Assembly: GCA_965637545.1 (NCBI GenBank)
Contig: OZ281500.1
Span: 3,224,001 to 3,288,000 of the forward strand
Reading direction: 5' to 3'
DNA: 64,000 nucleotides
DNA from: Phallusia mammillata
Lineage: Eukaryota
The notes under the pieces were generated by a model, which was given only the letters and a program-made list of their open reading frames with translations, was not told where the DNA came from and ran no database searches. The position numbers were made by a program, and so were the translations under genes. Below are positions 49,006 through 56,528 of this stretch, in pieces; within the stretch, counting starts at the first letter, position 1; every line of letters begins with the position of its first letter.

Positions 49006-52000
49006 ATGGCAAGCCTTAAAGAATTAGTAACAATTTGCATCTTTATCAACGTTGTTTTATGTACTACAGGTAAGTGGAAATTATTGTTATTTATCTCTTT
49101 TAGACCACGACTGCTAACTGTTTCAGCCAAAAAATAGTAAATAAAGAGTCAGAACAGAATGGAAACTTAGCTATAGGCCCATAGGCCTCTTCTGAAAACA
49201 CAAAAACTGTATGTATAACACAGTATACGTACCATGTTAGGAAATGTTGGAAAATACGTTAGGCATACGATTGCGCTAGTTTCGGGCCATGGCGTAAGCC
49301 CGCGCGGAACTCAATAAAACCAACGCGAAACTAGTATTTACACAAACGCAATCGTCACGTACACAAAAGTGTTACCTAACCCAATACTTAGATTTACAAG
49401 CAAAATGGTTACAAAATTTATACAATGCTTTATATCGCAGCCTGTGAGTACCGTAACCAATTAAAAACTTTGCAACTCGAGGGAATAGTCAACCCATTTC
49501 CGGCGATGGGCATTGTATGATGGCACCAATTGAGTATAAGTGACTGGTAAAGCGTTTAGATATTTGGTTCAATAACAAACCAATCTTGCCACTTGTCACT
49601 GTCAAAGAATGGGACATTTATAAGGGGTCTACTAAATCCCAATTTTGTTTTTACTTGCCCAGAGAAGCAAGTCCTTAGATCAAGCTTTTCGGGTCGGGTT
49701 CGGGCTTGCATAAAACGGACTTAAAAGCTAATTGAATTTAAACTCGGCCACATAGTGTCACAATTCCACTTCATTAATCTAACTATCCGGCCTTTTTTCA
49801 AAAAAAACACAACAAAGTTTAACGAGCTTTAGGCCAGTGCTTCGGGGTTTTTGGTCCCAACCTGTTGCTAACTAACAGCTTTGAGCCATTAGCCTACATG
49901 AGTAAAATAGCATTTTCGTTGACAAAGCTAACATTGTGCATAGTTTACGATGTCAACACACAAATTTGGAATGCAATTGTAGCTACGTTGTTCAGGCCGT
50001 CATCCCATTTTACATTTCATTTCACATGTAACCGAAACAAAATACCAACACGCTATAGTGTTATTAAAACAGAAAGTACAAATCGGGTTAAATAAGCTTT
50101 AGGTCAACAGTTGTGATCGCTAAAGCGCCTTTTTGGGCACGGCGTTGAAGACAGGAAGCACAAAAGACGTATTAAATCGGGAGTTTCCAGAGTTTAAGCT
50201 TCGGTAAACAATTTTTGTTTGCAGGGCTTTCGCAAAAGCTTGACCCGAAAATTTTGACGTTCAACAAACCCGATGAGGAGATCGCTGAAGGTAAAATAGT
50301 TATGTTGATAACATGGCTAGCAAGTTTTTTACGTCTAGGCTACCTCTTTTTTTGATTGAACAACTTTATCTGTTTCATCTTATTGTTTGACTAAAGCTTT
50401 AGATGTGTCAAATATTTACCTACGATGATATTTGTTTTCCATACTTCGTTGATATGTACACGTTGTGTAGTTTTCTGGATACACAAAACAAGAAAAGCTT
50501 CTATTACGCACAAGAGTAAACGTTTTTGCTCGACAGAACGGTCTTTAAGAAGCACAGCATCAGATATTTGCCAAACTGACAACAGCATAACTTATCAGAC
50601 AAATGGATCAACTACACCGACTCAATTGTTATGTTCGTGCGGAAAAGACAACTCGTCTGTGGTGAGTCGCATTTTTTCGGTGAACATTACAAAAATATTG
50701 TCCAGGCGGTGGCCGCAAAGAGCAGAATAAATCAGGAATTTTTCATATTATTAGACTTTGACCTTAGTAGAAAAGTTGGGAAGCACAAAGCGATTTTTTT
50801 TAAAACTTGAATTCATGTCAAAGTTTTTCTTCGCTTTGCGAGGAACTCCAGAGCCGAAGATTACGAAAGTGCACGCCCGAAACTTGGCCTGAACCTGATT
50901 TAAAAAAAGAACAAATTTGTAAAAATGCGGCAAAAATTATGCCGAGGGTTAAGTTAGAACCGAGTGAAGCCGGTTTGTTGGAAAAGCCTGAACCAGGCCC
51001 GAAAAGAACTAAATCGTCCCAAAATGTCGGCCTAATACAGACGGTTCCAGTAATAACAATTCTTATCCTAGGTAAGCTACAATAAAGCGCCAGTTTTGGT
51101 TTCCATTAAAGCGTTAAATTCCTTCTATCGCTTTGTACCTTGATATCATAATGATTTCATACTCGTGATTGCATTTGTTTTGACAAGATCGTGTTATTTG
51201 ATACTTGCTCCTTAAAATTTCCTGATCAAGTTATCTGAAACCTTAATCTGTACAGATTTGGAAGGACGATGGCTGCAACGATATAACAGCAGGAAACTTC
51301 TCGGATTCTACATTAAAACGTGGTTTCGTCGTTCACCCGCCGAACGTTGAAGATGGTCAATTGGTTATTTATTGCATCAGTGATGGATGTGTTCAGAAGA
51401 TTACTATAACATTTACGCCGGGCAAAGGTAAGACAAAAATACAAAGATTTTTTTTCTTTTTTTTCTTTCGTAATGAACTAAAGAGAAAGGATAGGCCTAC
51501 ACGACGTGTGTATTTAGACTTGGACTAAAAGCATTCCCAAGTATCAGTATGGATTCCAACCCACGAAACACCAAAATTTTGACTATGTCAGGGTGCATAA
51601 GTGACAAGCAAAACTGCTGCAAGGCATTATCACTTCTGTACTAAATAATTTGCACATTTTAAATGGTGATAAAAACGTCACATATCTGAAAGTAGCTTAA
51701 TGCGTTTTTTATGAACAGTGGTGTATAACAGAATTGTTGTACAAAAACACAGATACGGGAATGTCAAGCGGTCTTCGAGGTTTTCTCATTTTTATGATCA
51801 TAGCCGTCTTGCTCCTAACAACGCTGTTTTTCGTTACAAAGTTCAAAAGCCAAGTTTACCTCGGATTCCGAGACACCTGTGCGCCATCTAGCGATGGAGG
51901 TAAGTCATGTTTCCGAGATATCTATCTTTGCAAATGAACAGGCCCTTTGATATTCGGCTGATGTTTGTCAAACTGAAGCGGTGCAAAAACATGGGTGACT

Positions 52001-55000: not shown

Positions 55001-56528
55001 CTTGCTGCGTAATGGCATTCTGAAAATTTTCATGGCCCAATTATGCTTATAAGACCAGTTTGCACCATGCACGGAGTATTCATCAATCAAAGGGAATCTG
55101 CATTTCTCCCTAGCACCACAGAAATACATAGAAGTAAGCCCTGTCATCATTTAGATATCAACCGTGACCCGGTGACCTGATTCCTCGGCGATGCATCAAA
55201 TAAACTCAATAGCAATTAACAGCTTGTGGGTTAACTGCGTGGAGAAAGCATTTATTTACCTTTGTTCAGGCCGTGTGCGCTAACGCTGCGACTAAAATCT
55301 TTCCCAGAAAGCGGTTACGTGCGTGGATAGCGATTGCAGTTGCCCATAATTGCACAGGATCGTTCTCAGAACGATGTCAACCTCATGTGCAGAAGCACGC
55401 GCCTGGCAAGTCTGTCTGGCTTTCCAGTCACAACAACGAACCGCTGTTGTGGGCACACGAGCAGTAACGGAAAACACAAGTGGACCACGCCTGGGACGCG
55501 TGCTGGAGATTGGCAGATTGAACTGTCAACCTTTGCACGTCGATTCCACTTGAAGAGACCGAACGCAAAGTGAATCTGGGCGCGGTGTTGTGACACACCG
55601 GCATAGAATTCTTGTACTTACATGAGCAGTAGTACCAAAGAGGCCACTGCGACAAACCAAACATGCGTAGATTGTCGCTTTTAAGTGTTGACGCATTGAC
55701 CTCTACGCCACAACGCGCCTGTGAACACGTCATCACCGCAGCACGGCTGTAAATGCCACAGAAAACTGCCTAATCACTGCGTGATCCTTTGTACAGATCT
55801 TTCTGCCGCTGGTGCAGACCGACAAGGAAAAGCAAAAAACAATCCGCCAGATTCGTATGCACCTGCCAGCCGCGCGCCGAGGTAGTGCCAAGTCACGTGA
55901 TATGCGCTCACCAATCCTGAGCGATGTAGAAGACATCGACTCGCATTCGCGTAAGTGTAGATCGAGAGGTGGTGGGTTTTTATAGATTTTTGTTGGTGTG
56001 AAGACAATGTACACTTAACGTTTTATTGAACTGGGGCAAATGGGGAATAGAAGATAACGTTTTAATTGCGCAGTACACGCAGACGAATCTTACGGAGGAA
56101 CTGAAACGAAATACACTTTCAACAAAGCGAAGATACAAAACCATGATGAGCTCACAATGGAAGAGATGGAAGTTGAACACGAAGTAAGCATGACCTGATA
56201 AAAATAAGTTCACACACATATGATCCCAACCACAACACAAATGACCCACGGCTTCCGAAAATGATACTGCGAACTAGAAAAAAGAAACACCATTAAGGCC
56301 TATGGATAAAACAAATCACAGTTGGGGAAATGGGGTATTTTAGGAATGTATTTAGATACGCTTTTATACGAGTATTGCACAAATATATATTTTCGGAATT
56401 AAATACAATTTTGCATGCAGGGTGAACTTGTGTTTGACGAGGGCGAAGACCCAAAGAACATTGCAGTGAAACAGTACAAAGCTCGACCTGACTTCTACAC
56501 GTTCACTTCCGGTGCTGACCAAGCCTAA
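49006..56528 (+). CDS. SIGIRR: Single-Ig IL-1-receptor-related (SIGIRR/IL-1R8-like) receptor: signal peptide, one Ig domain, TM, TIR, long acidic tail; 11 exons, about 442 aa
   Basis: Exons 49006-49069, 50225-50290, 50537-50661, 51256-51427, 51732-51899, 52422-52565, 53947-54054, 54113-54222, 55797-55950, 56074-56183 and 56421-56528 (1329 nt, phase-consistent). TIR reads DGIEFDAYISIGKNESDRKFL...GYRFFIDDENLLPR...WCMYCFNEGLRKLLEL; tail QYKARPDFYTFTS. These match human SIGIRR as recalled (DGKLYDAYVS...DRKF, GYKLFLDDRDLLPR, WCSHSFREGLCRLLEL, NYSARTDFYCLVS). Confidence 0.8.

What the first reader, a model, noticed from the sequence alone, without database searches (positions are those of the whole stretch)
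49006..56528. An invertebrate chordate SIGIRR (IL-1R8) orthologue candidate
The architecture (one Ig, TM, TIR, long tail) and SIGIRR-specific TIR features are reconstructed from 11 phase-consistent exons: BB-loop LLPR rather than the PG of TLRs, and the EGLxxLLEL helix. SIGIRR is known as a vertebrate negative regulator of TLR/IL-1R signalling and a co-receptor for IL-37, and canonical IL-1 cytokines are not known from tunicates. A true orthologue would mean this brake predates the IL-1 ligand system (inference). An IL-1R-like gene may already be listed for Ciona, so novelty needs checking.
Basis: partly seen in the sequence, partly recalled or inferred. Interest (0 to 1): 0.7.

Follow-up and report, generated by a model that had tools for sequence, protein, structure and literature searches.

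The report
Sea-squirt single-Ig TIR receptor, SIGIRR-like
This is a real, spliced sea-squirt gene for a membrane receptor with one antibody-like domain outside the cell and a TIR signalling domain plus long tail inside; its closest known relative is the vertebrate inflammation brake SIGIRR, but true orthology and a braking role are still unproven, and the same gene already sits, unnamed, in other sea-squirt genomes.

Summary
Eleven + strand exons (49006-56528), all GT-AG, give one 435-aa ORF: signal peptide, one Ig-like domain, TM helix, TIR, and a 100-aa acidic tail. Spliced contigs of public runs confirm the junctions of exons 5/6, 6/7 and 7/8 and the exon 8 to 9 join. Exons 1-4 rest on homology only.

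Full-length orthologues with the same layout exist in Ciona, Clavelina and Styela, all labelled "uncharacterized", and in transcript contigs.

A profile of the tunicate TIRs scores zebrafish SIGIRR at 89 bits, against 48 for IL-1RAPL, 41 for IL-1RAcPb, 29 for MyD88 and 23 for TLR2. Foldseek and Atlas features also rank SIGIRR first. The gene is therefore an IL-1R-family TIR closest to SIGIRR.

No phylogeny could be run, because no vertebrate sequence could be fetched by reference. The C-terminal third of the TIR lacks Box 3, and this species has Ser where the other tunicates and SIGIRR have Cys.

IL-1 ligands are now reported across invertebrates but were not found in tunicates (PMC13736523).

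Verdict: new member of a known kind. A Ciona IL1R8 homologue was already mentioned in print (PMC8226699).

The parts
49006..49069 (+). Exon 1: start codon and signal-peptide-like segment (aa 1-22)
   Evidence: ATG, GT donor. A 23-aa first coding exon at the same place in the Ciona gene. No RNA contig here.
50225..50290 (+). Exon 2: N-terminal linker (aa 22-44) with the F.K motif shared with orthologues
   Evidence: Homology only.
50537..50661 (+). Exon 3: first half of the Ig-like domain (aa 44-85), with the CSC motif
   Evidence: C77 and C79 (P0004 numbering) are nearly invariant in the family.
51256..51427 (+). Exon 4: second half of the Ig-like domain (aa 86-143), with W88 and the YC motif
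   Evidence: Ciona exon at the homologous place. Ig-like fold in the orthologue model at pLDDT 55-66, with Foldseek Ig hits at E about 6e-4.
51753..51899 (+). Exon 5: transmembrane helix (aa ~150-172) and juxtamembrane segment
   Evidence: Hydropathy peak 2.84 at aa 152-170. Contigs cover 51809-51897 and splice to exon 6. tblastn to Ciona.
52422..52565 (+). Exon 6: TIR Box 1, helix A, strand B and BB loop (aa 192-240)
   Evidence: Best PDB hit of this exon alone is the SIGIRR TIR 7fcj, E 3e-4. Spliced on both sides in contigs. The Ciona exon has the same 144-nt length.
53947..54054 (+). Exon 7: TIR helix B and strand C (aa 240-276), with Ser at the SIGIRR Cys222 position
   Evidence: The contigs show no other letters here.
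54113..54222 (+). Exon 8: TIR helix C (EGLRKLLEL) and strand D (aa 276-312)
55797..55950 (+). Exon 9: end of the TIR (strand E and helix E, no Box 3 FW) and start of the tail with the conserved P(I/M)L..(A/V)E motif (aa 313-364)
   Evidence: The loose end at 54222 in three runs continues with the first 30 letters of this exon..
56074..56183 (+). Exon 10: acidic tail with the conserved ETKYTF motif (aa 364-400)
56421..56528 (+). Exon 11: C-terminal conserved block DP..(V/I).(V/I)..Y..(R/Q).(D/G/N)F(Y/L)..T and stop codon
   Evidence: P405, Y413, K417, F419 and T423 (P0004 numbering) are invariant in 11 tunicate sequences.
56529..56945 (+).
   Evidence: Contig X1 record 1 is 1174 nt, of which 385 lie up to exon 8. 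Exons 9-11 take 372, leaving about 417 nt. ATTAAA sits at 56926-56931. Inference only.

Best explanation
An expressed ascidian gene encodes a type I membrane protein of 435 aa. It has a signal peptide, one Ig-like ectodomain, one TM helix, a TIR domain of the IL-1-receptor family and a conserved, acidic, probably disordered tail of about 100 aa. It belongs to a single-Ig TIR receptor family found in all three ascidian orders sampled. The closest known relative of that family is vertebrate SIGIRR (IL-1R8), and the family is most likely its tunicate orthologue or co-orthologue. Shown: the gene structure, splicing of exons 5-9, the family, and SIGIRR as best match. Inferred: the TIR lacks the canonical Box 2 (RDxxPG becomes D-D/N/E-x-x-L-L-P-R/Q/K) and Box 3 (FW becomes T-I/L/V), and IL-1 ligands have not been found in tunicates. 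The protein is therefore more likely to modulate TLR/MyD88-type TIR assemblies by TIR-TIR competition, as SIGIRR does, than to act as a classical cytokine-driven MyD88 recruiter. The conserved Tyr-containing tail motifs probably dock a further partner. The confidence given (0.55) is for the statement as a whole including orthology; the structural part alone (real single-Ig IL-1R-family TIR receptor closest to SIGIRR) I put at about 0.85, and the braking function at about 0.35-0.4.
For: Gene model. RNA junctions. Orthologues have the same length and layout: Ciona P0024/P0028 (42% identity, E 2e-112), Clavelina P0004, Styela P0009, and transcript-derived P0008, P0012 and P0013. Their orders are given. 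Intron positions are shared with Ciona. Pfam TIR scores above cut-off in all five orthologues tested. The tunicate TIR profile against PDB gives zebrafish SIGIRR 89.1 bits (E 2.5e-24, gapless over 102 residues), IL-1RAPL1/2 48, IL-1RAcPb 41, MyD88 29 and TLR2 23 (whole-protein profile). Exon 6 of the window alone also ranks SIGIRR first. Foldseek of the orthologue model puts the SIGIRR TIR first at TMt 0.78-0.79 and rmsd 3.0, ahead of IL-1RAcPb at 0.68. In Atlas features the first five listed named clusters are all 'single Ig IL-1-related receptor' at 0.91. A Cys at the position of zebrafish SIGIRR's RCQRL Cys is invariant in the other tunicates. This is taken to be the Cys222 position that PMC3482685 lists as a SIGIRR hallmark. 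The architecture matches the published definition of SIGIRR: single Ig, TM, TIR and a 95-aa tail.
Against: No phylogeny was run, because no vertebrate IL-1R-family sequence could be fetched by reference. PDB holds no TIR of IL-1R1, ST2, IL-36R or IL-18R-alpha, so the PDB ranking is incomplete. Identity to SIGIRR (25% over 146 Foldseek columns, about 32% by eye over the first 100 residues) is within the paralogue range of 25-37% (PMC9213720). HMM alignments stop at strand D. The last third of the TIR lacks the W121/F129/W130 aromatic cluster that over 90% of IL-1R-family TIRs keep (PMC7075850). This species has Ser, the IL-1R1-type residue, where SIGIRR has Cys. The BB-loop Pro is not conserved across the family (K, E or D in P0008, P0013 and P0010). 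The ectodomain alone gives only generic Ig neighbours, and the tail alone gives nothing. No functional data exist.
Confidence: 0.55

Rival explanations
1. It is a pre-duplication 'proto-IL-1R' rather than a SIGIRR orthologue. On this reading the tunicate family descends from the single ancestor of all vertebrate IL-1R-family genes. It looks most like SIGIRR only because SIGIRR kept more ancestral TIR features, or because both independently have one Ig.
For: The second to fourth PDB hits are also IL-1R-family TIRs, at E 1e-9 to 1e-11. Identity to SIGIRR is in the paralogue range. Reviews describe SIGIRR as derived by loss of Ig domains from a distinct IL-1R-like ancestor, with DIGIRR as an intermediate (PMC9020223). 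This species has the IL-1R1-type Ser.
Against: There is a 41-bit gap between SIGIRR and the next family. The alignment to SIGIRR is gapless, whereas IL-1RAPL needs insertions. The GLxxLxEL..KP and WC motifs are shared. The post-TIR tail and the Cys are shared, and within the vertebrate family both are SIGIRR-specific.
Confidence: 0.25
2. It is a signalling, activating receptor. On this reading the single-Ig TIR protein is the ligand-binding or co-receptor chain of a tunicate pathway that recruits MyD88 and switches NF-kB on, not a brake.
For: The TIR keeps Box 1, the alpha-A Phe, the AB-loop Tyr and the (L/M)P at the end of helix E. This species has Ser at the position where IL-1R1 needs Ser447 for signalling. 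Conserved Tyr motifs in the tail suggest active docking.
Against: The Box 2 Arg and Gly and the Box 3 FW are missing in all members, and the BB-loop Pro is lost in three. The nearest relative is the inhibitory family member.
Confidence: 0.2
3. It has a convergent architecture. On this reading a tunicate-specific Ig plus TIR fusion arose by domain shuffling from a TLR-type or adaptor-type TIR, as proposed for cnidarian IL-1R-like proteins.
For: PMC7075850 assigned cnidarian Ig-TIR proteins to the TLR group and found IL-1R-type TIRs only in jawed vertebrates, with Ciona in its data set. Box 3 is absent.
Against: The TIR profile scores TLR2 at 23 bits and MyD88 at 29, against 41-89 bits for IL-1R-family TIRs. 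The Foldseek order is the same.
Confidence: 0.05

Closest known systems
Vertebrate SIGIRR / TIR8 / IL-1R8 (human 410 aa; zebrafish TIR structures 7FCJ and 7FCL)
   Same: Single Ig-like ectodomain, one TM helix, a TIR and a post-TIR tail of about 95-100 aa, with similar total length (435 against 410 aa) and exon number (11 against 10). It is the best TIR match by HMM, Foldseek and Atlas features. The alignment is gapless over Box 1 to strand D. Box 2 lacks the Arg, and helix C carries GLxxLxEL..KP. The Cys222-position Cys is kept in the other tunicates, and there is no Tyr at the Tyr536 position (by-eye register).
   Different: No Box 3 FW and no strand-E Trp. This species has Ser instead of the Cys. 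The BB-loop Pro varies within the family. The ectodomain shows no specific similarity. Tail homology is unverified: the resemblance of Y.AR.DFY to the human C-terminus rests on memory only. No ligand or function is known, and IL-37 and IL-18R-alpha are not known in tunicates.
Ciona intestinalis LOC100184671 (XP_002129958.1, XP_026693295.1), Clavelina lepadiformis LOC143451365, Styela clava LOC120335817
   Same: These are orthologues: 33-42% identity over the full length and 44-59% in the TIR, with the same domain order and the same tail motifs. Intron positions are shared with Ciona, and a TPH gene is the neighbour in both.
   Different: They are annotated only as 'uncharacterized' or 'TIR domain-containing'. 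All have Cys-Arg/Ser/Asn-Arg before strand C, where this gene has Ser-Lys-Val.
IL-1RAPL1/2 and IL-1RAcPb (IL-1R-family TIRs)
   Same: Next-best TIR matches, at 41-48 bits and TMt 0.57-0.68.
   Different: They have three Ig domains, insertions in the helix-A region relative to the tunicate TIR, canonical Box 2 and Box 3, and no shared helix-C motif.

Membership tests
SIGIRR (IL-1R8) | Type I membrane protein with a single extracellular Ig domain | tested here: met
   There is one C...W...YC module between the signal peptide and the TM helix. Full-length transcript-derived orthologues have the same single module. The Ig fold is supported only weakly: pLDDT 55-66, Foldseek Ig hits at E about 6e-4, and Pfam Ig_3 below cut-off in 2 of 5 orthologues. 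Exons 1-4 have no RNA support in this species.
SIGIRR (IL-1R8) | TIR domain closest to SIGIRR among TIR families (best-hit criterion) | tested here: met
   89 bits against 48 for the next family. Foldseek rank 1. The first five listed Atlas named clusters. Exon 6 alone.
SIGIRR (IL-1R8) | Falls inside the SIGIRR clade in a TIR phylogeny; reciprocal best hit | not testable with these tools
   No vertebrate IL-1R-family sequence could be obtained as an id, and long sequences may not be typed in.
SIGIRR (IL-1R8) | IL-1R1 Ser447 replaced by Cys (human Cys222) | tested here: not met
   The window protein has Ser (HRSKVLIV), and the contigs agree. All other tunicate members have Cys, aligned to the Cys of zebrafish SIGIRR RCQRLIVV. 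The feature is therefore met by the family but not by this gene.
SIGIRR (IL-1R8) | IL-1R1 Tyr536 replaced by a non-Tyr residue (human Leu305) | tested here: inconclusive
   Counting back from the conserved (L/M)P gives M in the window and V, L or Q in the orthologues, never Tyr. The register rests on my reading of the PMC7075850 numbering, not on an alignment to SIGIRR.
SIGIRR (IL-1R8) | Long cytoplasmic tail (about 95 aa) after the TIR | tested here: met
   The tail is 100 aa with 22 acidic and 12 basic residues. The orthologue model gives pLDDT 30-37 there. Three motif blocks are conserved across tunicates.
SIGIRR (IL-1R8) | Inhibits TLR/IL-1R signalling; co-receptor for IL-37 | not testable with these tools
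   Needs experiments.
IL-1R-family TIR (group 4 of PMC7075850) | Box 1, alpha-A Phe (F14), AB-loop Tyr (Y29), and M137-P138 at the end of helix E | tested here: met
   (F/Y)DAY(I/V)S is present, as are RKF and an invariant Tyr before strand B. (M/L)P is present in six of the eight sequences compared, the window among them; P0013 has LA and P0010 has LD.
IL-1R-family TIR (group 4 of PMC7075850) | Box 2 RDxxPG | tested here: not met
   The motif reads D-D/N/E-x-x-L/I-L-P/K/E/D-R/Q/K. Zebrafish SIGIRR also lacks the Arg (NDTNILPG).
IL-1R-family TIR (group 4 of PMC7075850) | Box 3 FW with the strand-E Trp (aromatic cluster, kept in over 90% of members) | tested here: not met
   The corresponding positions read T-I/L/V, and there is no Trp after strand E. 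HMM alignments to PDB TIRs end before this region.

The most novel reading that the evidence does not exclude
Tunicates, in which neither IL-1 ligands nor three-Ig IL-1 receptors have been found, keep a true SIGIRR orthologue under purifying selection in all ascidian orders sampled. That would put the IL-1R-type (group 4) TIR before the vertebrates, against the 2020 TIR survey. It would also mean that SIGIRR's ancestral and sufficient job is independent of IL-1, for example restraint of TLR/MyD88 signalling or a tail-mediated function. This could be tested in a simple chordate that has two or three TLRs.
Probability: 0.4. Interest if true: 0.6.

Novelty: new member of a known kind. Interest (0 to 1): 0.42.

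Why it matters
Reviews say little is known about SIGIRR's origin (PMC3482685). One review argues it shares no ancestry with the other IL-1R genes (PMC9020223), and a large TIR survey found IL-1R-type TIRs only in jawed vertebrates (PMC7075850). A conserved single-Ig, SIGIRR-like family in ascidians gives a concrete pre-vertebrate candidate. Tunicates appear to lack IL-1 cytokines (PMC13736523) and are easy to manipulate genetically, so they offer a natural IL-1-free background in which to ask what this receptor does to TLR signalling. The conserved tail motifs, which no study explains, are a second handle. The gain is modest. The gene is already present, unnamed, in public annotations of three other ascidians, and one paper has mentioned a Ciona IL1R8 homologue.

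Tried and rejected
1. Fetching vertebrate SIGIRR and IL-1R sequences for a tree failed. I tried search for homologous proteins with the tunicate alignment, the Styela TIR and its first 90 residues. Only tunicate proteins came back, because the word index does not reach 25-30% identity. get_proteins does not accept PDB chains. The one search of protein representatives went on exon 6, which was needed to obtain any full-length relative. No phylogeny or reciprocal search was therefore possible, and I did not type sequences in.

2. The spliced 435-aa protein has no reference. It was analysed only in scripts, and orthologues (P0004, P0024) stood in for it in Pfam, folding, Atlas and PDB searches.

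3. Exons 7, 8 and 9 gave nothing significant against PDB on their own.

4. Atlas searches with the tail alone (no hit) and the ectodomain alone (generic Ig, at most 0.83) added no SIGIRR-specific signal.

5. A full-text search for the remembered human C-terminal peptide found no paper. The resemblance between the ascidian and human Y.AR.DFY motifs therefore stays unverified.

6. The Ciona accession in PMC8226699 (XP_002122649.1) is not among the accessions of LOC100184671. I could not tell whether it is the same gene. No paper cites XP_002129958 or the LOC id.

7. Pseudogene or chance ORF is rejected, given the spliced RNA contigs, the intact ORF and the orthologues.

8. Read laying was limited to 6,000 letters.
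Full report
**1. The observation**

The eleven + strand exons are 49006-49069, 50225-50290, 50537-50661, 51256-51427, 51753-51899, 52422-52565, 53947-54054, 54113-54222, 55797-55950, 56074-56183 and 56421-56528. Every intron is GT-AG and the phases fit. The product is a single ORF of 435 codons.

The protein has these parts:
- a hydrophobic N-terminus (aa 1-22);
- an ectodomain with six Cys, the Ig-type C...W...YC spacing and three N-x-S/T sequons;
- one outstanding hydrophobic stretch, GFLIFMIIAVLLLTTLFFV at aa 152-170;
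- a TIR at aa ~193-335;
- a 100-aa tail that is net acidic.

The window has no N runs.

**2. Is the gene expressed and correctly spliced?**

Runs X1-X4 are on record only as "RNA?". Their contigs nevertheless skip exactly the predicted introns 5, 6 and 7. Once the tool's cut offsets are applied, the joints are 51899|52422, 52565|53947 and 54054|54113. In three runs the contigs leave the stretch at 54222 with letters identical to the start of exon 9. They therefore come from spliced RNA.

Contig X1 is 1174 nt long. That fits exons 5-11 plus a 3' UTR of about 417 nt ending some 14 nt after an ATTAAA at 56926 (inference). No contig covered exons 1-4, so the N-terminal third rests on homology. One X2 contig carries 23 nt of intron 7.

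**3. Relatives**

A HMMER scan of 1.84 billion representatives with exon 6 (47 aa) returned 14 hits. They include full-length proteins of 428-457 aa.

By cluster look-up and a later search, these are:
- Clavelina lepadiformis LOC143451365;
- Styela clava LOC120335817;
- Ciona intestinalis LOC100184671;
- several unnamed proteins from contigs of about 2 kb that look like transcripts.

All named entries read "uncharacterized" or "TIR domain-containing". The three named species represent Aplousobranchia, Stolidobranchia and Phlebobranchia.

The spliced model aligns to these proteins end to end, with no break at any exon boundary. Identities are as follows:

| Region | Identity to orthologues |
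|---|---|
| Full length | 33-42% (Ciona E 2e-112) |
| TIR | 40-59% |
| Tail | 24-46% |
| Ectodomain | 16-28% |

The window is therefore not Ciona.

Exons 5-11 map one to one onto Ciona exons. That includes a 144-nt exon 6 of identical length and a 23-aa first coding exon.

**4. Domains**

Pfam TIR is above its cut-off in all five orthologues scanned. Ig_3 appears only below cut-off, in two of them.

An AlphaFold model of the Clavelina orthologue, built from an 11-sequence alignment, gives:
- the TIR at pLDDT about 80;
- a TM helix;
- a beta-rich ectodomain at pLDDT 55-66;
- a tail at pLDDT 30-37.

Foldseek finds Ig domains for the ectodomain at E about 6e-4 to 2e-3, including FGFR1 D1, an obscurin-like Ig, Dlar, IL-1RAcP and IL1RAPL1. 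"One Ig-like domain" is therefore reasonable but only weakly supported.

**5. Which TIR?**

A profile of seven tunicate TIRs against all PDB sequences gives (the whole-protein profile agrees):

| PDB TIR | Bits |
|---|---|
| Zebrafish SIGIRR | 89.1 (E 2.5e-24) |
| IL-1RAPL1/2 | 48 |
| IL-1RAcPb | 41 |
| MyD88 | 29 |
| TLR2 | 23 |

The SIGIRR alignment is gapless over 102 residues. It shares DAY(I/V)S, DRKF(V), (N/D)xN(I/L)LP, C(Q/R)RLI(V)V, (E/D)WC and GLxxL(I/L)EL..KP. IL-1RAPL needs insertions and lacks the last two motifs.

Other measures point the same way:
- Exon 6 of the window alone also ranks SIGIRR first.
- Foldseek ranks the two zebrafish SIGIRR TIR structures first, at TMt 0.78-0.79 and rmsd 3.0.
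- The first five listed named clusters by Atlas features for the Ciona orthologue are all "single Ig IL-1-related receptor" at 0.91. IL-1RAP, IL1RAPL and arthropod SIGIRR-like clusters follow.

There are limits to this evidence:
- PDB has no TIR of IL-1R1, ST2, IL-36R or IL-18R-alpha.
- The identity lies within the 25-37% found among IL-1R paralogues (PMC9213720).
- The ectodomain and the tail give no SIGIRR-specific signal on their own.

**6. Hallmarks**

PMC3482685 defines SIGIRR by a single Ig, a TM helix, a TIR, a 95-aa tail, and Cys222 and Leu305 in place of IL-1R1 Ser447 and Tyr536.

The tunicate family has the architecture and the tail. It also has an invariant Cys aligned to the zebrafish SIGIRR Cys. 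The window's own protein has Ser there (HRSKVLIV). That is the IL-1R1-type residue, and the RNA contigs agree.

Against the IL-1R-family signature of PMC7075850, the family scores as follows:
- It keeps Box 1, the helix-A Phe and the AB-loop Tyr. The (M/L)P at the end of helix E is kept in six of the eight sequences compared, including the window; P0013 and P0010 lack the Pro.
- It lacks the Box 2 Arg and Gly.
- It lacks the Box 3 FW and the strand-E Trp.
- Three members have lost the BB-loop Pro.

LLPR is therefore not a family mark that I could verify.

The tail carries three blocks conserved across ascidians: P(I/M)L..(A/V)E(D/S)(I/M), ET(K/E)YTF, and the terminal DP..(V/I).(V/I)..Y..(R/Q).(D/G/N)F(Y/L)..T. 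From memory, the last block resembles the human SIGIRR C-terminus, and another first-stage note says the same. I could not obtain a vertebrate full-length sequence to test it, so it counts only as a lead.

**7. Mechanism**

Shown: a spliced, conserved single-pass receptor with an IL-1R-type TIR closest to SIGIRR.

Inferred: the non-canonical Box 2 and Box 3, the kinship with the one inhibitory family member, and the failure to find IL-1 ligands in Ciona, Botryllus and Styela (PMC13736523) all favour a modulator of TIR assemblies over a classical cytokine receptor.

My estimates are:
- about 0.85 for "IL-1R-family single-Ig receptor closest to SIGIRR";
- about 0.55 for strict orthology;
- about 0.35-0.4 for a braking function.

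**8.

It does not hold as written. IL-1 homologues are now described from cnidarians to amphioxus. The ligand system is thus at least as old as the receptor, and tunicates look like a case of ligand loss with retention of this receptor.

**9. Novelty**

The family is not described in any paper I could search. No paper cites the Ciona LOC id or its accession. PMC8226699, however, states in one sentence that Ciona has an IL1R8 homologue under another accession. The genes are also in RefSeq.

PMC7075850 reports IL-1R-type TIRs only in jawed vertebrates, so the point is under-appreciated but not new in kind. I rate it a new member of a known kind, of moderate interest.

**10. Surroundings**

A tryptophan-hydroxylase gene lies at about 21768-25016 on the minus strand. 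Its best PDB hits are TPH1 and TPH2. The Ciona orthologue also sits directly beside a Biopterin_H gene and a CPT1-type gene. From memory, human TPH1, SIGIRR and CPT1A all lie on chromosome 11. This is a weak synteny lead that I did not test.

Noticed in passing
window 21768-25016 (- strand): Exons of a tryptophan hydroxylase gene; two exons each hit TPH1 and TPH2 best in PDB. The Ciona orthologue of the TIR gene also lies directly next to a Biopterin_H gene and a CPT1-type gene, so the linkage is conserved between two ascidians, with an inversion. Human TPH1, SIGIRR and CPT1A are all on chromosome 11 (from memory), which is a possible ancestral linkage.
   Followed up: partly
window 53980-53988 (codons H-R-S of exon 7): This species has Ser (TCC) where all eleven other tunicate sequences and zebrafish SIGIRR have Cys, the 'Cys222' hallmark position. 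The following residues are K-V instead of R-R. The RNA contigs agree with the genome.
   Followed up: partly
window 54090-54112: One contig of run X2 starts 23 nt inside intron 7. This may be partial intron retention or an unprocessed transcript.
   Followed up: no
window 4196-6772 (+ strand): Uninterrupted 858-aa ORF with TPR repeats (sub-threshold per repeat) and a DUF294 putative nucleotidyltransferase match above the Pfam cut-off. This is an unusual single-exon gene for this genome.
   Followed up: no
window 39380-40969 (-) and 58865-60460 (-): Two long ORFs (529 and 531 aa) with no Pfam match. The second lies in a stretch with raised GC (0.45) and strong GC skew (+0.25). These may be mobile-element or repeat-derived.
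   Followed up: no
window 10542-11051 (+ strand): A 169-aa ORF with a collagen triple-helix repeat match.
   Followed up: no
P0001 (Logan contig, 144 aa): A read-through ORF from a closely related species carries exon 6 at 91% identity. It also carries part of the upstream intron in recognisable form (SDQLP..ILSRD), so some of intron 5 is conserved between close relatives.
   Followed up: no
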